A DNA stretch of 64,000 nucleotides. Source: Octopus bimaculoides (lineage: Eukaryota). The notes beneath the pieces are model-generated. The model ran no database searches and was not told the origin of the DNA. It worked only from the letters and a program-made list of their open reading frames with translations. The stretch is taken from positions 5,077,691 through 5,141,690 of the forward strand of contig NC_068982.1 in assembly GCF_001194135.2 (NCBI RefSeq). Direction: 5' to 3'. The first letter of the stretch is position 1. Every line of letters starts with the position of its first letter. Shown here piece after piece: positions 4,125 to 56,756 of this stretch. The position numbers were made by a program, and so were the translations under genes.

Positions 4125-5194
4125 TCTCTGTTTTTACACCATTTCTTTCTCCATATTTTCACGGGTAGACTTTTGCTCGAAGAAATTGTTATTACAGCTG
4201 GACGTCATTCTTTCTGTTAACCACCCAACAAGGAAGTAGGAGAGGAACCTGTTTTTAACCATCAAAATAAAACATTTAGAGCTCAGGGCAATTCTCTTTC
4301 AAGTGCATCATGAGCTTCACAAAGTGAAACACATACTGCACTGCATGCAACCACAAAGACTATAGCAGCACTCTGTATCACACACTCCTTTATACCATTT
4401 GTCTTCATCTGTGGAGACCCCTTCATTAATTATCTACACATCAGACCATTTAAGGGTACCGTTCAATCATTGGGCAATAAACTGTGCTTGTGAAGACCTG
4501 TTGAGGCAAGTGAAGTTGTTGGCATGGCCGATGACAGCACCATCAGATTGGCGCCTGTGCCGGTGGCACGTAAATAGCACCATTTGAGTGTGGTCGATGC
4601 CAGTGCCCTCTGACTGTCTCCCGTGCTGGTGGAACGTAAAAAGCATTATTCGAGGGTGATCAATGCCAGCGCCGCCTGACTGGTCCTGTGCAGGTGGCAC
4701 GTAAAAAGTACCCACTACACTCTCAGAGCGGTTGGTGTTAAGAGCATCCAGCCATAGAAACATTGCCAGATCGGATTGGAGCCTGGTACAACCTTCTGGC
4801 TCGCCAGCCCTCAGTCAAACTGTCCAACCCATGCCAGCAGGGAAAGCGGACGTTAAATGATGATGATGATAATGATGATGACTATCAGAAACTCAGTAGT
4901 AAACAATCTAAGCTCATCAACACTGTCAACTTACCAGCTTATCTTCTGTTGCAACTACATCAATTTGCCATCGCATGTTGCAATGAGCTTTCTCTAAAGC
5001 TGAGCAATCCTTCTTAGCAGAATGTGACACTCAAAGTAGTTTGAATGATGTTAATTTAAATACAAACCCTTAAAGTTTCTCCTCTGGACTCAAGGGAAGT
5101 CCTTTTCTGTTCTATATTTAAGAGATGAAGAATTATGTACATTATTTACATCATTTACATTTGACGGATATTTGTCCTCATCTTGTTTGTTGTT

Positions 5195-5240
5195 AACACA
5201 ATGTTTCGGCTGATATACCCTCCAGCCTTCATCAGGTGTC
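5195..5240 (-). ncRNA. Minimal type-I hammerhead ribozyme motif (family D, copy 1)
   Basis: Minus strand reads gacac-CTGATGA-a-ggctg-gagggtatat-cagcc-GAAA-cat-t-gtgtt. Helix I is gacac/gtgtt and helix II is ggctg/cagcc. Helix III ACGT has decayed to ACAT. Confidence 0.75.
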
Positions 5241-5537
5241 TTGGGGAAATTTCGAACCTGGGTTCCCATTCCTGAGGTCTTTTTCAATGTTATTATTATT
5301 ATTCAGGTCACAGCCTGGAATCTATTACAGGCTGTGACTTGAATAACAACAATAATAATAATAATAATAATAATAACCATAAGAGAATCACAGCAAACTA
5401 CAGCACATACCCAAGGCACACAGAGCTGTGCTCAGTAGTGAAGTGAAAGCACACTATAAAACTACTGAATAATAACAATAATAATAACATCGAAAAATAC
5501 TCTAGGAATGAGAACCCAGGTTTGAAATTTCCCCCAA

Positions 5538-5583
5538 GACACCTGATGAAGGCTGGAGATTATATCAGCCGAAATGTTGTGTT
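5538..5583 (+). ncRNA. Minimal type-I hammerhead ribozyme motif (family D, copy 2)
   Basis: gacac-CTGATGA-a-ggctg-gagattatat-cagcc-GAAA-tgt-t-gtgtt. Same helices as copy 1; helix III ACGT has decayed to ATGT. Confidence 0.75.
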
Positions 5584-5915
5584 AACAACAAACAAGATGA
5601 GGACAAATATCCATCAAACGTAAATAATGTAAGTCCTTTTCTGTGTATTTTTTTTTCCATTTCTAAAGAGAGATTCTTTAAATGAAAGAGTCTAAAGGCA
5701 CAGGAGTGGCTGTGTGGTAAGTAGCTTGCTCACCAACCACATGGTTTTAGGTTCAGTCCCACCGCGTGGCACCTTGAGCAAGTGCCTTCTACTATAGTCT
5801 CAGGCCGACCAAAGCCTTGTGAGTGGATTTGGTAGACGGAAAGTGAAAAAAGNNNNNNNNNNCGACCAAAGCCTTGTGAGTGGATTTGGTAGACGGAAAG
5901 TGAAAAAAGCCCTTC

Positions 5916-19465: not shown

Positions 19466-20555
19466 AATATAAATTTTTTTACATAGAGCATAAAAAATAC
19501 AGAATGCTTAGAAGAAAGCAGATAATTTCTTAACTCAACACCTGTTTCAGGAAGCTCAGTGTTATGGAATAATTGTAATATTCATAATTTGCAGATGGAA
19601 TATGTAAAAAGTCTATAATGTGCAACCAGTAAATATATGATATTGTTCAGTTTTATTTCAAGATTTCTTGCCAATAGAGAAACGGGAAGAAGTAATTGAA
19701 GTAGATGGTGAATATGCTCCAGAATAATCATTTAAAGATGTTTTTGTTAAAGATGTTGTTACTGATTTTGTTGAATAAAATTTATTGAAAAAAAGCCACA
19801 ATAATTATGCACCAACGCAATGGATGCCCATCTGATGCTGTATGGCATTGAATGCATGTTCTGCTATTTGGAATTGTTAGCATGCTGGGCTAAAGGTTTA
19901 GCAGCATTTCTTCCGTCTTTACGTTTTGAGTTCAAATTCTACCAATGCCCCTTTGCCTTTAATCCTTTCAGGGTCAATAAAATAAGTGTTAGTTTAGTAC
20001 TGGGGCTCAGTATAATCGACTTAACCCCTCCCCTCAAATTTCTGGCCTTGTGCCAAAATTTGATTTTGATATTCAGACAGTTTGTGTATGTTTGATGCCT
20101 CTGTGGTGGACACTTCAGAAAGATGCATTCAGTGTTTAACCATATTTGATTCTTTAGCATTCACCGAAAGAAATTAACAAAGATTTCAACTCAATGTCTA
20201 AATTAATATTTTGGAATGTGAGAAGGTTTTAAATTTACTCATATTTGACAAAACCTTTGGCGATTTGCTGTGCTTGAGAAGACTCCTCAAGCCAAGTGAA
20301 ATTGTAGTCCTGGACAGTGCTGATGACACGTCATAGGCACCTGTGCCAGTGACACATAAAAGGCACCCACTACACACTTGGAGTGGTTGGCATTAGGAAG
20401 GGGGTCCAGCCATAGAAACCAAGCTAAAATCAGACTGGAGCCTGGCACTGTGGTTTATGAGTTCCAATCAAATTGTCTCGCCCATGCCAACATGGAATAC
20501 GGATGCTAGATAATGATGATGATGATGATGGTTGAATGAAAAGTAAAAGACAGCA

Positions 20556-20800
20556 GGGGCATATGGCGTAGTGGTTAAGAGCACAGGCTACTAACCCCAA
20601 GATTCCAAGTTCAATTCCAGGCAGTGACCTGAATAATAATAACAATAACAACAACAACATCAAAAAATAGATTAGGAATGAGAACCCAGGTTCGAAATCT
20701 CCCCAAGACACCTATTGAAGGCTGTAGGGTATATCAGCTGAAACGTGTTAACAATAAACAAGATAAGGACAAATATCCGTCAAATGTAAATAATGTAAAT
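20556..20800 (+). mobile_element. Near full-length family D element: tRNA-like head, (AAT/AAC)n spacer, tail with degenerate hammerhead
   Basis: A box tggcgtagtgg and B box gttcaattcc, anticodon-like loop ctactaa, then (aat)n. The tail ccccaagacacCTATTGAaggctgtagggtatatcagctGAAAcgtgtt at about 20707-20750 has a mutated core. Confidence 0.8.
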
Positions 20801-23800
20801 AAAGCAGTGCTATTTGTCTTTTACCCTGCAGAGGTGTTATAAATAAATGAGTAATGCACTTCACTGTCCATTTGTATTCCTCTAAATGAACTTGGACAGT
20901 GTCAGCACAACAAACTAATTAGTATAAAGCGATTTAACTCACTGAATTTAAGTTAGGAGGAACAGTGCTTCTAAGAAACCATTGAAGTAAAAAAATTCTT
21001 AATTAAAAAACACCATTCAAACCAAGCATCTCTTAAAATATTCTGCCTATGCTTAATAGCAACAAGATCTACCTTTGAATAACTTCTGATGATCTACAAA
21101 CTAAGCATTACAAGTTTAAGTTTTAAATCGTAGAAAACATTAATGAAGCAGAATGGTCTTGGAATACTGGGAAAAAAATTCTTTAACAAACTATCTTTGT
21201 GTTATAGACTCACTGAAGCTAATCAACAACAAAGAATTTACTTGGAAAATTTAACAGGCATTTTTGCACAGCTCTCAAGATGTAGTTATATTAATATACC
21301 AGAAAGGTTAACTTGATTCGAAATCGAAAGAAGTGCTTCTTGTTTTTTAAGTAAATTCTTTAATCATTTAAAGTAAAAGAAACACTCAAAACATTCTTCC
21401 TCTTGAAGTTAGAAGCGAAAAGTTCTAAAGTTAACCACAATCACATTTCAGCTGTAAAGGTCTCATAAATTACTTCTTACCTTGGTATTTTATTATCAAT
21501 ATTTCTCAAGCGGATTTTTTTAATCTTTCCTTAAGAGAAATACTTGCTGTTGATGTGGTTCATATTGATTTAGACTTTTAGTTAAATGACAATTGCTTAA
21601 CATCTAATGGCTTTATATATGTGTGTGAGCCAGATTCTTGGATTGAATTAAGATTTCAAAGCAAAGCTTTGACAAAAAAAAAAGAAAAAAAAAAAGAATC
21701 AATTACAGAATCACCTCTTAATAGTATTCTTCCAATCATGGTGCTGGGTATGATATACGTGCAAAGTATGGTGTCTGATTGATTCCATTTCAGACATTCA
21801 AGTAAGTCAACCAATGGTTTTCTTCTTGGTCAGTGTTAACGCTGAGTAATTCTCTACAAGCAATGGTCAGACTTCAATGACACTGAAACATCATGGAGTA
21901 TTAACATCAATCCGGAGTGGAGGTGTGTGACTAGGATTCATAATCAAAAGGTTGTGGTTTTTGATTTTATGGACTGGGTGATGTGTTGTGTTCTAGAGCA
22001 AAGGAATTCATTTTACATTGCTCCGGTTCACTTGGCTGGCAAACGCGAGTAATCCTGTGATGGACCAGTGTCCAGTGCAGCAGGAGGAATATATGCACCA
22101 TGGAAACTAGGAAACTGGCCCTATTAGTCTATAATGACTCGGGAAGGACCTTTATCTTTGTTTGATCCCAACAATAATCCTGAGCCAAACAGTTGTCTTT
22201 AGTAAATTGAACAAACTTAAGGCAGCGAGCTGGCAGAAACGCTAGCATGCTGGGCAAAATTCTGAGTTCAAATTCTGCCAAGGTCGACTTTGCCTTTCCT
22301 CCTTTCAGGGTCGATAAACTAAGTCCCAGTTGCATACTGAGGTCAATCTAATCGGATGGCCCCTGCTCCTCAAACATTTCAGGCCTTGTGCCTAAAGTAG
22401 AAAAGAAACGTTAGCATGTTGGGTGAAATGCTTAGCAGTGTTTCGTCTGTCTTTACGTTCTGAGTTCAAATTCCGCCGAGGTCAACTTTGCCTTTCATCC
22501 TTTCAGGATTGATAAATTAAGAACCAGTTATGTACTGGGGTCAATCTAATTGACTGGCCACCTCCCCCAAAATTTCAGGCCTTGTGCCTAGAGTAGAAAA
22601 TGAATTAAAACAAACTTGTGGGTCCTTTAAAATGAGTCATAAATTATTTTTAATGACAACTATTTTTTTTTTTTGAAGTAATAGATTAAAATTCATTTAA
22701 AAAATAAAACCAAAACAAAACTAACTAAGGTATCAGAGCTAATGTATCCCCAGTAACCTGTGGTATATTTTTGATAATAGTAAGAAATAAGACAGATAAA
22801 TCAAAAGATTTTTCCTTTGGTATAGATTTACAAAATAACTGCATATTTCTCACAGCAGAAATATTGGAAACAAAAGAGACCGTATTAATGCACTAATATG
22901 TTAACGTTAGCCATGATCCAAACTGCCACAGAAGAATTTCATGCAATATTTATAATGCATCATCACCACCACCACCACCACCACCATCATAATCATCATC
23001 GTCGTCATCATCACCACCATCATAATCATCATCATCGTCATTTCAGTATTCTTACTATTATTGTGCTTTTACTGCATAACTGAATGCACCTCTGTGTAAC
23101 TTGGCTGTGTGCAGTGGTTTGTTTTGGTTTTCTATTCCATTGAAAATGTTCTCCATAATCCGTGTGTGTGTATGTGTGTGTGTGTGTGTGTATGTGTGTG
23201 TAGTGCTCGGTGGAGCTGTTTCTCACTATGCTGTGGACATGTTTCATGCCCCATTCTTCCCTTTCGTATTAATCTACATCATTGTTTTATCATTCCCAGT
23301 TCTATTACTGCAATTGCTTCCGTGTGTCCCATTCCTACGTTCTGCTTAGCACCATCCCTAGATCTCGACATTTATTCTTTCATTCTTTTACTGGATTCAA
23401 TCACTGTGCTACGACCATGCTGCAGCACACCTTCGAAATTTCAGTTGAGCATTTATTTCAGTTTGGCTTTGTCTTATTTTTATGAAAGCTCCAAGAACAC
23501 TACCATGCCTATGAATGTGTACATGTACATGCACACACACATACACACAAACACACACATGCACGCAAATATACATCTTTTATCTTTTAGGTGTTACAGT
23601 TATAAGACTGTGGCCATGCTGGAGCACAACCCTGAAGAATTTTAGAACAAATTGACCCCAGCATTTATTTTATTTTAAGCCTGCTTCTTATTATATTAGT
23701 TTCTTTTGCTAAACTGCTAAGTCAGAGGGATGTAAACACACCAACACCAGCTGGTCAAGAGGTGGTGGGGGTGCACAAACACAGACAATATTCTATTCAG

Positions 23801-40565: not shown

Positions 40566-41689
40566 CTCTTATTATTATTATTTTTATTATTATTATTTAT
40601 TTATTATTGATTTCTTTTTATTATGGAATGCAATATATTTATAGGGAGCCATCTTTAAGAAGTTTAGACACAGACAAAATAGATGGCAAAATTTTCTCCT
40701 CTCTCTCCCACTCTTTGTCCTTCTTTCTTTGTGATTTTTAACACCAAATAGTAAACAAAAAAAATTATAAACTTGCTCACAGTTATGTGTATATGCATAT
40801 TTCATGACGAAGAGAAAGAGTTACAGACTTACCAACATACACACATCTGTAATTTTTGCAAAATTTCTTTCAAACAGGAAGAAAACTTGTACGAAATATG
40901 ATTTACTAAATACGATGTATTTGTTATTATGAATTGTCCTTTTAATTCATTTTTAATCATAGACACATAATTATATGCTGAAAAAGGCTTCTGTCACAGG
41001 TTGGAGTAACAACAAATGAGAATATATTTGTGCAAAGTTGAGGGAGTCTCAAAATTTAGTTTGGTCTGGTGAACAGAACTAAGTTACCAAAGATTACCAG
41101 TAATGTTCCAAGATGTAAGCATCATCTGCAGAGCTTTGTGAAGAAAAATCTAATCTGTGAATAATTATGAGAAAAGTAACAGGTGATCTATTATATTTGT
41201 TTTAATAAAATTCAATATGAACTTCTGATTAAGAGGTTATTTAAGTTTTGTAATAAAACATAAGAGAAAATATTTTTATTTAATATTTTTTTAATTTTCA
41301 TATTTTTATTCTTTTTCAAAATGGATAGTCCAGAAACATTCCTATCCAGGATTGTTGTAATCTTTTCTTTATTGAAGTTAAGTTAGTGTTAATATGTTTA
41401 ATGTAGAGAGTGCTGATATGCTAACTTCAGCAAGTAAAGACAAGTATTAGTCAGTGACCACTATTATTTTGATCATTTTGACAAGGAAATGACTGTAGAC
41501 ATGTTTCTGCCTCAATAAGACCTCATCAATGACACAGACATCACATTACTTGCTCAAGAAGTGATGAGAGATTCACTGAGTAGACCTAAGTAATTGAAAA
41601 CTGATTGACATAGACAAACAAAGCAGTTTAGAAGTCTGTTTCACTGATGAGGTTGAAATAAAATGAAAACATGTCTAGAGTTATAATTA

Positions 41690-41876
41690 TTATTATCATT
41701 ATTATTATTCAGGTTACTGCCTGGAATTGAACTCAGAATCTTGGGGTTAGTAGCTCGTACTCTTAACCATTACGCCCACAGGCATATGGTGTAGTGGTTA
41801 AGAGTGCAGGCTACTAACCCCCAAGATTCCGAATTTGATTCCAGGCAGTGACCTAAATAATAATAATAATAATAAT
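41690..41876. mobile_element. Head-to-head inverted pair of family D tRNA-like heads (about 80-bp arms)
   Basis: ttcaggttactgcctggaattgaactcagaatcttggggttagtagc...cttaaccattacgcc is followed by its reverse complement gcatatggtgtagtggttaagag...ccaggcagtgacctaaataa. A possible degenerate TSD is atgtctagagtt (41671) / atgtctgaagtt (41875). Confidence 0.8.
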
Positions 41877-49562: not shown

Positions 49563-49883
49563 NNNNNNNNNNNNNNNNNNNNNNNNNNNNNNNNNNNNNN
49601 NNNNNNNNNNNNNNNNNNNNNNNNNNNNNNNNNNNNNNNNNNNNNNNNNNNNNNNNNNNNNNNNNNNNNNNNNNNNNNNNNNNNNNNNNNNNNNNNNNNN
49701 NNNNNNNNNNNNNNNNNNNNNNNNNNNNNNNNNNNNNNNNNNNNNNNNNNNNNNNNNNNNNNNNNNNNNNNNNNNNNNNNNNNNNNNNNNNNNNNNNNNN
49801 NNNNNNNNNNNNNNNNNNNNNNNNNNNNNNGTGGTGATGACGGCGGTGATGGTGATGGCGGTGATGGTGATGATGGTGATGGT

Positions 49884-54616: not shown

Positions 54617-56756
54617 ATGCTTGTGTGTGTGTGTTTGTTCCCCCAACATCGCTTGACAACCAATGGTGGTGTGTTTACGTCCCCATAACTTAGCAGTTCG
54701 TCAAAAGAGACCGATAGAATAAGTACTAGGCATACAAAGAATAAGTCCTGGGGTTGATTTACTCGACTAAAGGCGGTGCTCCAGCATGGCCACAGTCAAA
54801 TGACGGAAACAAGTAAAAGCGTAAGTGGTTCAATGTAGTGTTGAAATATTCAAATTTGTGTGCACGTGCATGTGTGTGAGTGTGTCCGTGTGTGTTTGTG
54901 TGTGGTGTGTATGGATGTATGTGTGAAAGAAAGTTGAGAGGTTAGGATCTCTTATGCCCCACGGTGCCCACCTGAGCCGTGTGGCAGAGGAAAAAATCTG
55001 ATGTATTTGACCTGACCAAAAGACATCAAAGAGACTCGTAACAGATTGTATTCAATTAATAAGCAGTTATCAAATATATGACTTTTATAGACTCACCTAA
55101 TTCACAGTTATTCAGCAATAAAATAATTACTACTATTGCTGTTTATTACAGTGATGATGATGATGGTGGCGGGGTTGGTGTTGGTGGTGGAGATAATGAT
55201 GACGGTGGTGTTGGTGATGATAACAAATTACACACAGGGAAACACACCATCTGTGCTACATCGAATNNNNNNNNNNNNNNNNNNNNNNNNNNNNNNNNNN
55301 NNNNNNNNNNNNNNNNNNNNNNNNNNNNNNNNNNNNNNNNNNNNNNNNNNNNNNNNNNNNNNNNNNNNNNNNNNNNNNNNNNNNNNNNNNNNNNNNNNNN
55401 NNNNNNNNNNNNNNNNNNNNNNNNNNNNNNNNNNNNNNNNNNNNNNNNNNNNNNNNNNNNNNNNNNNNNNNNNNNNNNNNNNNNNNNNNNNNNNNNNNNN
55501 NNNNNNNNNNNNNNNNNNNNNNNNNNNNNNNNNNNNNNNNNNNGTGATGATAACAAATTACACACAGGGAAACACACCATCTGTGCTACATCGAATAAAA
55601 AAAAGCAACCACAGATTAAAATATAATGACACTTTGCAATTGACCATCAGTTTCGGATAGTTGCAGCTACACAGGATTGAATATTTTCGCTGCTTATTAC
55701 TCATAAGTATTCTATCAACTTCAGCGATATAAAAGAGCAAAGTCATCTATGCAAGAAAATATGTAAATGCTATAAATTTCGGTGCCATTAATTACTACAA
55801 ATATTGGTGCAACAAATGTGACGTTCATATAACGCAGAGAAAATGGTGAAGACTATGCCAGGCTCTTTTTTTTTTTTTTTTTTTTTCAGAAATACATTTA
55901 TAATTTCTGAACAGATTTTGCTAGCTATCAATTAAAAGATGGAAATATAATTAAATAATTACAATTAAATAATTACATTTGAATAACATTAGATTCAAAT
56001 GGAGGATCATTATTCCAAAATCAAAAGGAAAAGGTCAAATGATGTTGAAATGAAAAAAAAGGAAAATGAAAAATTAATTAACAAATTAAAAGTAGCCTAT
56101 AATAAGGCAATTTCCGAAAGAAAAGGAGAGACATTGAAAGCAAGGAGCAGAGATAAAGGAAATGAGGAGGTAGATTTCTTTTTCGGGGAATGTTTCAGGA
56201 AAAAAAATTCAGATAATTCTCTACTTGTGTCAACTTATTAAGTAGCATAGATAACAGATTAATCAAAATAACAGCTGCAGGCTACTGAAGAAACACAAAA
56301 GTACATGACGGAAAACCTATGTAAATGTGCAGAAATATGCAATAAACACAACAGATATACTTTCCAAGCAAGATGAACGAAAAGATTATCTCTAATAACA
56401 TTGGCAGTAACTGCTATTAACAGCATTGCCAAACATCATGGAGCAATCACATTACACCCTCATGTTATAACGATAATAATACCATTAGCAAAAAGCAACT
56501 AAGTAGACAGAGATATTGTTATTCTTTATCCACCAGCAGCAGCAGCAGCAAGCTCCCTCAAAACAATATATTTTGTCGAAGGAATATTTGCCAGCAATAT
56601 AAAAGAAAATAATAAAATTCACCCTGTTTTCATCTTTGTCTGTATATGGAAAGCGGACGTTAAACGATGATGATGATGATGATGATGATATATACACACA
56701 TAATGATATATAATGGATGAGCTCAAGAATTGTGGTTCTTTTCTCTAAATTATATA

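What the first reader, a model, noticed from the sequence alone, without database searches (positions are those of the whole stretch)
5097..5644. tRNA-headed, hammerhead-tailed fold-back element: candidate non-autonomous 'ribozyme SINE' mobilised by Penelope-like machinery
Seen: family D combines a Pol III tRNA-like head (intact at 20556) with an (AAT)n spacer and a 3' tail carrying a type-I hammerhead fold. At this locus two copies sit head-to-head, each with its ribozyme near the outer end, and the whole unit is bracketed by a 14-bp direct repeat (aagtccttttctgt). Established: minimal type-I HHRs with palindromic helix III occur in Penelope-like element (PLE) terminal repeats, and PLEs often insert with inverted terminal repeats, whereas ordinary SINEs borrow LINE tails. 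Inference: this is a SINE whose 3' end is set by self-cleavage and which parasitises a PLE RT/GIY-YIG. It may overlap earlier-described octopus tRNA-derived SINEs, but I do not know of the ribozyme tail being noted.
Basis: partly seen in the sequence, partly recalled or inferred. Interest (0 to 1): 0.9.

Follow-up and report, generated by a model that had tools for sequence, protein, structure and literature searches.

The report
Octopus tRNA-headed SINE with hammerhead tail
This is an old, decayed, back-to-back double insertion of an octopus jumping element that joins a tRNA-like promoter head to a unit of a hammerhead-ribozyme repeat; its insertion scars look like the work of Penelope-type enzymes, but the ribozyme does not set the element's 3' end.

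Summary
Window 5097-5644 is a head-to-head pair of 5'-truncated copies of one retroposon family, bracketed by a perfect 14-bp target-site duplication.

The family has a 74-nt tRNA-derived head with Pol III A and B boxes but no detectable cloverleaf, then a (TAA)n linker, then about 185 nt of tail. The majority consensus of 13 tails fits the published Penelope-type minimal hammerhead: helix I 5 bp, CUGAUGA, an unpaired A, G10.1-C11.1, GAAA, a palindromic CG, then U-U and the cleavage site. All three window copies are dead, through CpG decay, core mutations or a deletion.

New here: the tail is about 1.3 units of a 129-135-nt hammerhead repeat. In another assembly that repeat forms 98%-identical tandem arrays with intact ribozymes, again next to a tRNA-like head.

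Head-to-head junctions recur: 4 of 8 extra octopod contigs, and 10 of 82 translated relatives against 0 tail-to-tail. One arm regularly lacks the last 32-40 nt. Both are described hallmarks of Penelope-like insertion.

Not supported: the 3' end lies about 90 nt beyond the predicted cleavage site, so self-cleavage does not set it. No autonomous Penelope element was found to match, so the partner is inferred. The closest precedent is schistosome SMalpha.

The parts
5097..5110 (.). Left copy of the 14-bp target-site duplication AAGTCCTTTTCTGT. Its last 5 nt (TCTGT) also match the element's 3' terminus (...ACAGA on the minus strand), which suggests microhomology priming.
   Evidence: The 3' terminus was compared with L021 and P0001.
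5111..5321 (-). Left arm, read as the primary copy. It is 5'-truncated at head nt 59 and carries the full 'long' 3' terminus.
   Evidence: blastn and nhmmer against the full copy; alignments A1 and A5.
5111..5137 (-). Terminal extension. With the 5 nt that overlap the TSD it reads CATAATTCTTCATCTCTTAAATATAGAACAGA (32 nt). It is present on this arm only.
   Evidence: The same sequence ends other copies: P0001, P0007/L021, L019 minus arm, L007 plus arm. It is homologous to the last ~38 nt of the 129-nt tandem unit.
5132..5161 (-). 3.3 copies of the 9-mer GTAAATAAT (the copy number varies between elements).
   Evidence: TRF; alignment A1.
5195..5240 (-). Decayed minimal hammerhead: GACAC-CUGAUGA-A-GGCUGG-loop8-UCAGCC-GAAA-CA-U-U|GUGUU. 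Position 16.2 has changed G to A.
   Evidence: descriptor scan.
5290..5303 (-). (TAA)n linker of the left arm.
5304..5341 (.). Palindrome centre. The 3' ends of the two head fragments (from head nt 59) lie at 5304-5321 (-) and 5324-5341 (+), with a 2-nt spacer.
   Evidence: the repeat finder pair I3; A1.
5342..5376 (+). Expanded (AAT)n linker of the right arm.
   Evidence: TRF.
5377..5469 (+). Nested fragment of an unrelated repeat family ('X') that ends in ACTGAA plus a trinucleotide repeat. It probably inserted later into the linker.
   Evidence: 75% match to 23059-23133 (-); absent from the left arm.
5488..5631 (+). Right arm tail module, read as the secondary copy. It ends at ...AATGTA, 32 nt short of the long terminus.
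   Evidence: The same end point occurs in L007 minus arm, L019 plus arm and 20556 copy.
5538..5583 (+). Decayed minimal hammerhead (GAAAUGUU: position 15.2 has changed C to U; two changes in loop 2).
   Evidence: descriptor scan.
5631..5644 (.). Right copy of the 14-bp target-site duplication.
20556..20802 (+). Full-length reference copy: head 20556-20629 (A box 20564-20574, B-box-like 20608-20618), (TAA/CAA)n linker, tail from 20658, dead hammerhead 20707-20749, short 3' terminus. No significant TSD.
41687..41875 (.). Head-only head-to-head pair: 41687-41778 (-) and 41781-41875 (+). Each arm ends in (AAT)n. The arms start at head nt ~10 and ~2.
   Evidence: The candidate TSD is not significant.

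Best explanation
The 548-bp unit is one old retrotransposition event of a composite non-autonomous retroposon of octopus.

The element:
- a 74-nt tRNA-derived head with Pol III A and B boxes;
- a (TAA)n linker;
- about 1.3 units of a 129-135-nt repeat that carries a Penelope-type minimal type-I hammerhead;
- a variable (GTAAATAAT)n tract and a 32-nt terminal piece.

How I read the event:
1. The left (minus-strand) arm is the primary target-primed copy. It starts from the true 3' terminus, with 5 nt of microhomology to the target.
2. cDNA synthesis stopped at head nt 59.
3. The polymerase then turned back. This was most simply hairpin self-priming on the nascent cDNA; a second priming at the other nick is the alternative. 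That made the right arm, which ends 32 nt short of the terminus.
4. The whole unit was sealed with a 14-bp target-site duplication.
5. Later, another repeat landed in the right arm's (AAT)n, and CpG decay inactivated both ribozymes.

The hammerhead was inherited with the repeat unit, a retrozyme-type and PLE-related sequence. It marks the element's origin and does not define its 3' end. The enzyme that moved it was most likely a Penelope-like RT/GIY-YIG endonuclease.

Shown: the anatomy, the TSD, the hammerhead motif in the consensus, homology to tandem hammerhead arrays, recurrent head-to-head junctions, and the one-sided terminal piece.

Inferred: Pol III transcription, ribozyme activity in master copies, the turn-back step, and the identity of the enzyme.
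For: Anatomy and TSD.

Promoter boxes: one hit in the window against 0.004 expected by chance.

Hammerhead:
- The majority consensus of 13 tails (A5) reads GACAC CTGATGA A GGCTGG-8-TCAGCN GAAA CG T T GTGTT. [quoted passage not shown] Helix II is 6 bp, against the 7-8 bp quoted there for schistosome motifs.
- At 15.2-16.2, CG is the commonest state (6 of 13). TG (2) and CA (2) are the expected CpG-decay products.
- The descriptor gave 0 chance hits in 1000 simulated windows.

Homology to hammerhead repeats:
- A translated-frame search found 82 cluster representatives, among them tandem arrays.
- L020 10030-10379 has a 129-nt period, 2.7 copies at 98% identity, and two intact minimal hammerheads.
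- The D-family (this retroposon family) unit aligns end to end with that unit. All core nucleotides are identical. The differences are confined to N7, loop 2, one compensated helix II pair (U-A to C-G) and distal helix I.

The head-plus-tail architecture recurs: L012, L017 twice, and L020 with a different tRNA-like head.

Head-to-head junctions:
- window loci 1 and 3; contigs L007, L012, L019, L021, L020, L023;
- 10 of 82 translated relatives run antisense then sense, and 0 of 82 the reverse.

One-sided terminal piece of 32-40 nt with a fixed boundary. An 8-bp duplication flanks the whole L020 complex.

Literature:
- PMC8557442 describes PLE insertions as 5'-truncated, with an adjacent inverted 5'-truncated copy, partial tandems, and a 30-40-bp tail at one end.
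- PMC4209133 reports dual minimal hammerheads 100-700 bp apart on opposite strands.
- Octopus vulgaris has 30 recently active Penelope families (PMC13282606).
- Animal retrozymes are argued to be non-autonomous PLE derivatives (bioRxiv 10.64898/2026.07.22.740005).
Against: - No PLE ORF, and no match to a PLE 3' end, was found in the window or in the two 20-kb loci that hold relatives. The RT genes there are APE+RT LINEs.
- A variable microsatellite-like 9-mer tail is typical of LINE-dependent SINEs.
- There is no covariation inside the D family: 81.9% of cells are paired against 80.6% in shuffles.
- 4 of 11 D copies carry the inactivating G5-to-A change, so selection for cleavage in the SINE lineage is doubtful.
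- Rfam hammerhead models give no hit. They also miss the intact units of L020, so this is uninformative rather than negative.
- The head has no detectable cloverleaf.
- In context, the minimum-energy fold of the tail sequesters the 3' strand of helix I in another hairpin.
- The turn-back step is inferred from symmetry only.
Confidence: 0.65

Rival explanations
1. It is an ordinary LINE-dependent tRNA SINE (partner CR1, L2 or RTE). Its body happens to contain a fossil piece of a hammerhead repeat. The inverted pairs arise from hairpin self-priming or twin priming during LINE target-primed reverse transcription.
For: - The 3' end is a variable-number 9-mer repeat (1.4 to 3.3 copies), like the tails of stringent LINE/SINE pairs.
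- A 14-bp TSD is typical of LINE insertion.
- The only RT genes seen near relatives are APE+RT LINEs.
- RTE, CR1, Dong-R4 and L1-Tx1 LINEs are active in octopus (PMC13282606).
- The L020 complex could be read as twin priming on one RNA.
Against: - The whole 135-nt tail, including its terminus, is homologous to a hammerhead tandem unit. It is not just a central fragment.
- The LINE in L023 shares no similarity with the unit.
- Head-to-head duplication of the same segment is not what twin priming gives.
- The 10:0 orientation bias and the fixed one-sided 32-40-nt piece are described for PLEs, and are said not to be seen in LINE TPRT (PMC8557442).
Confidence: 0.2
2. One reading: the hammerhead cleaves the Pol III transcript and so creates the 3' end that is reverse-transcribed.
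For: - A type-I hammerhead leaves most of the ribozyme on the upstream fragment.
- From my own knowledge (paper not read here): in endonuclease-lacking PLEs, hammerheads next to terminal telomeric repeats have been proposed to expose the priming 3' end. PMC8557442 says only that adjacent hammerhead motifs and reverse-complement telomeric repeats assist attachment to telomeric overhangs.
Against: - Copies retain 57-90 nt of conserved sequence downstream of the predicted cleavage site.
- Both alternative 3' termini (...AATGTA and ...TATAGAACAGA) are far from GAAACGUU|.
- In tandem relatives the insertion ends at ...TTTAGAC, about 10 nt before the next CUGAAGA box.
Confidence: 0.03
3. The hammerhead resemblance is a chance match in an ordinary SINE body.
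For: - Rfam gives no hammerhead hit.
- Folding energy is unremarkable (z = -0.9 and -1.6).
- There is no covariation inside the family.
Against: - 0 chance hits in 1000 simulated windows, and no other hit in the real window.
- Features not required by the catalytic boxes are present: the unpaired nucleotide, G10.1-C11.1 and the palindromic CG.
- The motif is the best-conserved part between the D unit and a 129-nt tandem unit, with one compensated pair.
- Rfam also misses the intact tandem units.
Confidence: 0.03
4. The palindrome is a DNA-level event (a fold-back or MITE-type DNA transposon, or an inverted duplication by repair or replication), or two independent insertions.
For: - Terminal inverted repeats and a flanking direct repeat superficially resemble a MITE.
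- MIR-like hairpin hits in Rfam show how hairpin-like the locus is.
Against: - A 14-bp duplication is long for cut-and-paste transposons (own knowledge).
- The same family exists as a single copy with a promoter head and no inverted repeat (20556).
- Both arms start at the same head nucleotide, with a 2-nt spacer.
- One TSD encloses both arms, so two independent insertions are unlikely.
- The arms differ at their outer ends by a discrete 32-nt piece, as in other loci.
Confidence: 0.04

Closest known systems
SMalpha / Sjalpha SINE-like retroposons of Schistosoma (Ferbeyre et al. 1998 and Laha et al. 2000, as summarised in PMC6765202 and PMC8490949)
   Same: A short non-coding retroposon with a Pol III promoter followed by a type-I hammerhead. 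It occurs both dispersed and in tandem.
   Different: - Different phylum, and no sequence comparison was made here.
- SMalpha has a canonical, fast-cleaving hammerhead with loop-loop contacts. This one is the minimal, PLE-type form with no helix III beyond ACGU.
- Here the ribozyme lies in a separate repeat unit joined to the head by a (TAA)n linker.
- Head-to-head insertions and a one-sided terminal piece are not part of the SMalpha descriptions in the papers I read.
Minimal hammerheads of Penelope-like elements and their dispersed 'solo' copies (Cervera & de la Pena 2014, PMC4209133; Lunse et al. 2017)
   Same: [quoted passage not shown]
- Pairs of motifs a few hundred bp apart on opposite strands.
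   Different: - Those motifs were mapped to pLTRs of autonomous PLEs or treated as truncated PLEs. Here the motif sits in a short element with its own tRNA-type promoter head.
- Helix II is 6 bp, rather than the 7-8 bp quoted for schistosome motifs.
Metazoan non-LTR retrozymes (Cervera & de la Pena 2020, PMC7229834; review PMC7761336; Li, Clavereau & Pollet 2026 bioRxiv)
   Same: - Non-coding repeat units with a type-I hammerhead, proposed to be non-autonomous PLE derivatives.
- Relatives of this tail form 129-nt tandem arrays with an intact ribozyme in each unit (L020, L023).
   Different: - The review states that retrozymes seem to harbour no promoter. This family, and the L020 relative, carry a tRNA-like A/B-box head.
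- The octopus copies are dispersed single units with defined 5' and 3' ends, not circularly permuted tandem units.
- The unit (129-135 nt) is shorter than the 170-400 nt reported.
Insertion architecture of Penelope-like elements (Craig et al. 2021, PMC8557442)
   Same: 5' truncation, an inverted 5'-truncated copy abutting the 5' end, partial tandems (in the relatives), and a 30-40-bp terminal piece present at one end only.
   Different: - There is no RT/GIY-YIG ORF here.
- In three loci (window loci 1 and 3, and L012) the arms are nearly symmetrical, which suggests self-priming. Symmetrical arms are not mentioned in the passages of the PLE paper I read.
Octopus tRNA-derived SINEs OK, OR1, OR2 (Ohshima & Okada 1994)
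   Same: Octopus, tRNA-derived head.
   Different: In the library I searched, no paper combining 'hammerhead' or 'hammerhead ribozyme' with 'octopus' describes a hammerhead in an octopus SINE.

Membership tests
PLE-type minimal type-I hammerhead (descriptor of PMC4209133) | Catalytic boxes CUGANGA and GAAA in type-I order | tested here: met
   Present in the left and right arms and in the 13-copy majority consensus. Mutated in the 20556 copy (CUAUUGA).
PLE-type minimal type-I hammerhead (descriptor of PMC4209133) | One unpaired nucleotide between A9 and G10.1, and a G10.1-C11.1 pair closing helix II | tested here: met
   CUGAUGA-A-GGCUGG...UCAGCC-GAAA. The same holds in the intact tandem units of L020.
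PLE-type minimal type-I hammerhead (descriptor of PMC4209133) | Palindromic 15.2-16.2 with no loop 3, then U16.1 and H17 | tested here: inconclusive
   Met by the majority consensus (ACGU-U; CG in 6 of 13 copies) and by L020. Not met by any copy in the window: CA, UG (a wobble pair), or ambiguous because of a deletion.
PLE-type minimal type-I hammerhead (descriptor of PMC4209133) | Helix I of 4-5 bp formed across the motif | tested here: met
   GACAC/GUGUU, 5 bp including one G-U. 86% of cells are paired over 13 copies, with no covariation.
PLE-type minimal type-I hammerhead (descriptor of PMC4209133) | Self-cleavage, as a dimer | not testable with these tools
   Needs in vitro transcription of monomer and dimer.
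Rfam hammerhead families (Hammerhead_1 and the others) | Covariance-model score at or above gathering, or at least E<=10 | tested here: not met
   No hit in the window. The same models also miss the intact, 98%-identical units of L020, so the test has no power for this variant.
tRNA-derived SINE (definitions of SINEBase, PMC3531059) | Short (<1 kb), interspersed and non-coding, with a target-site duplication | tested here: met
   About 250-285 nt; dispersed copies in the window and in 8 octopod contigs; a 14-bp TSD at this locus.
tRNA-derived SINE (definitions of SINEBase, PMC3531059) | Internal Pol III promoter: A and B boxes at tRNA spacing | tested here: met
   TGGCGTAGTGG followed 33 nt later by a B-box-like site (AGTTCAATTCC at 20608-20618). 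One hit in the window, 0.004 expected by chance. No TTTT run inside the sense strand.
tRNA-derived SINE (definitions of SINEBase, PMC3531059) | At least 60% identity to a tRNA over 60 nt, or a cloverleaf | tested here: not met
   ARAGORN finds nothing at thresholds from 100% down to 70%, and the Rfam tRNA model gives no hit at E<=10. Identity to individual tRNA species was not tested, as no tRNA set was at hand.
tRNA-derived SINE (definitions of SINEBase, PMC3531059) | [quoted passage not shown] | not testable with these tools
   Only indirect: 82 clusters of translated relatives at 50% identity. No octopus genome could be scanned.
Non-LTR retrozyme | Tandem repeats with a type-I hammerhead in every unit | tested here: not met
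   Octopus copies carry one unit and are dispersed. The feature is met by the relatives in L020 and L023: 2.7-2.8 units of 129 nt.
Non-LTR retrozyme | Expressed as circular RNA of unit length | not testable with these tools
   Needs RNA work.
Non-autonomous Penelope-like element | PLE-type insertion structure: an inverted 5'-truncated copy abutting the 5' end, and a 30-40-bp terminal piece at one end only | tested here: met
   This locus plus L007, L012, L019, L021, L020 and L023. 10 of 82 relatives are head-to-head against 0 of 82 tail-to-tail. The terminal piece is 32 nt (D family) or ~40 nt (ENA family) with a fixed boundary.
Non-autonomous Penelope-like element | 3' end shared with an autonomous PLE of the same genome | not testable with these tools
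   No PLE sequence was present in the window or in the fetched loci, and no octopus genome or repeat library could be searched.

The most novel reading that the evidence does not exclude
Pol III-driven, tRNA-headed SINEs built from a hammerhead (retrozyme) unit are a widespread and overlooked class. They would supply the missing promoter for animal retrozymes and would be the main short parasites of Penelope-like elements in cephalopods and at least one other animal lineage.

Their near-symmetrical head-to-head copies would record a turn-back of the PLE reverse transcriptase. In this locus the turn-back falls at T-loop position 58/59 of the tRNA-like head, which would hint that the SINE RNA is modified like a tRNA (an m1A58-type RT stop).
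Probability: 0.25. Interest if true: 0.75.

Novelty: new variant of a known kind. Interest (0 to 1): 0.58.

Why it matters
Two open points in the field would become testable.

1. How promoter-less animal retrozymes and PLE-derived hammerhead repeats get transcribed. Here a tRNA-type Pol III head is fused to one unit, in octopus and, with a different head, in a second organism.
2. How Penelope-like elements make their peculiar tandem/inverted insertions with a one-sided 'tail'. A 250-nt element with many copies gives clean junctions (turn-back point, fixed 32-nt boundary, TSD) that are hard to read in 3-4-kb PLEs.

It would also give the first SINE-PLE partnership comparable to the SINE-LINE pairs.

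On the practical side, Rfam's hammerhead models miss this whole variant. Such ribozymes and their SINEs are therefore probably under-annotated in mollusc genomes. One copy is even annotated as the N-terminus of a dystrobrevin isoform in O. bimaculoides.

Tried and rejected
- Rfam at gathering and at E<=10 on four stretches found no hammerhead and no tRNA, only spurious miRNA-like hairpin hits caused by the palindromes.
- ARAGORN at lowered thresholds found nothing in the heads.
- Exact 20-nt seed scans of the JGI metagenome and GTDB genome collections returned only chance 20-25-nt matches; L001-L005 are irrelevant.
- Pfam scans of the 20 longest window ORFs found no domain. Most long ORFs are artefacts of N runs.
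- A translated antisense-frame query found nothing.
- DNA for the O. bimaculoides chromosome copy (P0017) could not be fetched because the gene range is too long.
- Candidate TSDs at 20556 and 41687 are not better than chance.
- I first took the 27-nt stretch at 5111-5137 for untemplated or locus-specific sequence. I rejected that when the same sequence turned up at the end of other copies.
- An alternative hammerhead register with a hairpin helix III (GUUGU-GUUA-ACAAC) fails: there would be no U16.1/H17.
- Supplementary sequence files of PMC4209133 and SINEBase are not held, so there was no comparison with published minimal hammerheads or with the OK/OR1/OR2 consensus sequences.
- The RT genes near relatives turned out to be APE+RT LINEs, not PLEs.
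Full report
**1. What is at 5097-5644**

The region is an inverted repeat. Arms 5146-5252/5526-5632 are 92% complementary and arms 5243-5303/5474-5534 are 87%. A central palindrome has arms only 2 nt apart.

It is bracketed by a perfect 14-bp direct repeat, AAGTCCTTTTCTGT, at 5097-5110 and 5631-5644. No shuffle in 200 reached its score.

The window is AT-rich (34% GC) and full of short retroposons with trinucleotide-repeat tails. Translated copies of this family are recorded from Octopus bimaculoides.

**2. The family**

blastn and nhmmer find three tail copies and five head copies or fragments in the window:
- a full-length copy at 20556-20802 (+);
- the two arms of this locus;
- a head-only head-to-head pair at 41687-41875.

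The full copy has three parts: a 74-nt head, a (TAA/CAA)n linker, and a ~150-nt tail.

The head has an exact A box (TGGCGTAGTGG) and a B-box-like site (AGTTCAATTCC) at tRNA spacing. This combined pattern occurs once in the window and 0.004 times per simulated window. It is not an intact tRNA: ARAGORN finds nothing even at 70% thresholds, and the Rfam tRNA model gives no hit at E<=10. 'tRNA-derived promoter head' is a fair description; 'intact tRNA-like' is too strong.

Both arms of the locus begin at head nt 59 and run outwards through the linker and tail. Because one TSD encloses both, head fragment, linker and tail were inserted together. The composite is therefore a real transposing unit, not a nested accident. 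Head-tail linkage recurs in other contigs: L012, and L017 twice.

**3. The hammerhead**

Read as RNA, the tail contains GACAC-CUGAUGA-A-GGCUGG-(8 nt)-UCAGCC-GAAA-CG-U-U|GUGUU.

This is the architecture that Cervera and de la Pena described for Penelope-like elements (PMC4209133):
- a short helix I;
- a G10.1-C11.1 pair;
- no helix III beyond a palindromic 15.2-16.2, so that two motifs must pair to form helix III.

I coded that descriptor. With the 15.2-16.2 pair left free, its only hits in both strands of the window are 5195-5240 (-) and 5538-5583 (+). It gave no hit in 1000 Markov-simulated windows.

No window copy is intact:
- the left arm has CA at 15.2-16.2;
- the right arm has UG;
- the 20556 copy has CUAUUGA, a C11.1-to-U change and a 3-nt deletion.

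With ten more copies from other contigs, the plain majority consensus is GAAACGTT. CG occurs in 6 of 13 copies, and TG (2) and CA (2) are the expected CpG-decay products. The consensus passes the strict descriptor.

Rfam finds no hammerhead.

Four of 11 copies carry G5-to-A. The dispersed copies therefore decay neutrally, and the SINE lineage may not depend on cleavage.

**4. Where the tail comes from**

The tail is open in one reading frame, so I searched its translation.

Two close relatives appeared first: an O. bimaculoides UniRef entry and a Logan contig. A profile search then found 82 cluster representatives.

Many of them are tandem arrays of a ~43-residue unit. One locus, L020 from ENA assembly ERZ21867824 (organism not named), holds 2.7 units of 129 nt at 98% identity. 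Two of them carry intact minimal hammerheads: CAC-CUGAAGA-A-GGCCGG-(8)-UCGGCC-GAAA-CG-U-U|GUG.

The octopus unit (135 nt, from helix I to the 3' terminus) aligns end to end with this unit:
- In the 46-nt ribozyme, 38 positions are identical. These include every core nucleotide, the unpaired A, G10.1-C11.1 and C15.2-G16.2.
- The eight differences are N7, two loop-2 positions, one compensated helix II pair (U-A to C-G), and three distal helix I positions.
- The rest of the unit is 70% identical.

That pattern is what a constrained ribozyme would show between families. The ~50 nt upstream of the octopus ribozyme resembles the end of a preceding unit by my reading. On that basis the tail is about 1.3 units of a retrozyme-type repeat.

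In L020 a different tRNA-like head (A box TGGCGTAACGG, B box GGTTCAATTC), followed by ~130 nt of body, precedes one unit on the opposite strand. The head-plus-hammerhead-unit architecture is therefore not confined to octopus.

**5. Insertion structure**

Head-to-head junctions recur:
- window loci 1 and 3;
- L007 (junction at 705), L019 (164/165), L012 (heads abutting at 89/94), L021;
- L020 and L023.

Among the 82 translated relatives, 10 run from an antisense copy straight into a sense copy. None runs sense into antisense.

The arms differ at their outer ends in a regular way:
- One arm carries the long terminus ...AATGTA-CATAATTCTTCATCTCTTAAATATAGAACAGA. This is seen in the window left arm, L019 minus arm, L007 plus arm, L021, P0001, P0007 and P0020.
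- The other arm stops at ...AATGTA. This is seen in the window right arm, L007 minus arm and L019 plus arm.
- In L020 and L023 the short arm stops ~40 nt before the unit's end.

An 8-bp duplication (CTTAAAAA) flanks the whole L020 complex.

Craig et al. describe exactly this set for Penelope-like insertions: 5' truncation, an inverted 5'-truncated copy abutting the 5' end, partial tandems, and a 30-40-bp 'tail' at one end only. They state that these features are not seen in LINE target-primed reverse transcription (PMC8557442).

In three loci the arms are almost symmetrical:
- this locus: both arms start at head nt 59, with a 2-nt spacer;
- 41687-41875 and L012: the arms start at nt ~10 and ~2-4.

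This fits a turn-back of the polymerase on its own cDNA (hairpin self-priming). Other loci are asymmetric, and L020 could be twin priming. This step is inference.

**6. Sequence of events at this locus (inferred)**

1. Target-primed reverse transcription started from the long 3' terminus on the left side. The last 5 nt of the element (ACAGA) match the target, which suggests microhomology priming.
2. Synthesis stopped at head nt 59.
3. Turn-back produced the right arm, which stopped 32 nt short.
4. Sealing left a 14-bp duplication.
5. Later, a fragment of another repeat family (5377-5469; homolog at 23059-23133) entered the right arm's (AAT)n.
6. Both arms then diverged (K2P 0.09-0.15 between them). 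With the calibration quoted in PMC13282606 this puts the event very roughly 10-25 million years ago.

**7. What is not supported**

The 3' end is not made by self-cleavage. The predicted site (after GAAACGUU) lies 57 nt (short terminus) to about 90 nt (long terminus) upstream of the copy ends, and that downstream sequence is conserved in the copies aligned. In tandem relatives the insertion ends ~10 nt before the next CUGAAGA box.

The ribozyme is therefore a passenger or a regulator, not the 3'-end maker.

The partner enzyme is also not shown. The window has no recognisable RT or endonuclease gene. The two RT genes near relatives are APE+RT LINEs unrelated to the unit.

The variable 9-mer tail would fit a LINE-dependent SINE, so that rival keeps about 0.2.

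**8. Comparison with what is known**

- Schistosome SMalpha/Sjalpha are Pol III SINE-like elements with a hammerhead (PMC6765202, PMC8490949). A 'ribozyme SINE' is therefore not new in kind.
- Minimal hammerheads in PLE terminal repeats, and thousands of dispersed copies, are known (PMC4209133).
- Animal retrozymes are now argued to be non-autonomous PLE derivatives (bioRxiv 10.64898/2026.07.22.740005). They are said to lack promoters (PMC7761336).
- No paper in the library I searched describes a hammerhead in an octopus SINE. Repbase, Dfam and the 1994 OK/OR consensus sequences could not be checked.

I file the element as a new variant of a known kind: a tRNA-headed SINE built on a PLE-type hammerhead unit, with PLE-type insertion scars.

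**9. Verdict**

- Observation: confirmed.
- Interpretation: partly supported. The PLE link is likely; the role in 3' end formation is wrong.
- Confidence in the overall explanation: 0.65.
- Interest: 0.58. It is a useful, testable link between SINEs, retrozymes and Penelope-like elements, resting so far on decayed copies and indirect evidence for the enzyme.

Noticed in passing
window 41687-41875: Head-only palindrome. Two tRNA-like heads abut at their 5' ends (arms from nt ~10 and ~2, with an 11-nt centre). Each ends in (AAT)n and has no hammerhead tail. Either a simple head+(TAA)n SINE exists on its own, or priming occurred inside the linker.
   Followed up: partly
window 5377-5469 and 23040-23160 (-): A separate repeat family ('X') ends in ACTGAA plus a trinucleotide repeat. 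The D head ends the same way (CCTGAA + (TAA)n). At 23040-23160 it is flanked by (CA)n on one side and (ATG)n on the other.
   Followed up: partly
window 5690-5900: Another tRNA-like SINE lies next door. It is interrupted by a 10-N gap (5853-5862) flanked by identical 38-nt stretches (5806-5843 and 5863-5900), which looks like an assembly artefact.
   Followed up: no
window 4800-4881 and 20400-20535: A third SINE-like family ends in ...CCCATGCCAGCA..GGAAA..CGGA.. plus (ATG)n. It sits shortly upstream of both D loci.
   Followed up: no
window 26501-27321, 36657-37228, 49563-49830, 55267-55543: Long N runs (assembly gaps) produce the longest 'ORFs' of the window in all frames. None has a Pfam domain.
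   Followed up: yes
P0017 (NCBI, Octopus bimaculoides GCA_001194135.2): A D-family tail, hammerhead frame included, is annotated as the N-terminus of a 'dystrobrevin beta isoform X1' model. It is either exonised or a gene-model artefact.
   Followed up: no
L020 9691-10382 and L023 10076-10511 (ENA ERZ21867824, organism not named): Young 129-nt tandem arrays with intact minimal hammerheads, arranged head-to-head. In L020 the minus arm is a full SINE with a tRNA-like head. Many gene-caller ORFs beginning MANGIRTGDPRGFNKG... are translations of this element.
   Followed up: partly
L020 9000-11000: Rfam release 15 reports no hammerhead family, even at E<=1, for intact units that fit the published minimal descriptor. 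This variant is invisible to standard annotation.
   Followed up: yes
window 5324 and 5321 (head nt 59): Both arms stop at the position that corresponds to T-loop nt 58/59 of the tRNA-like head. That is where m1A58 blocks reverse transcriptases in real tRNAs. It may be coincidence.
   Followed up: no
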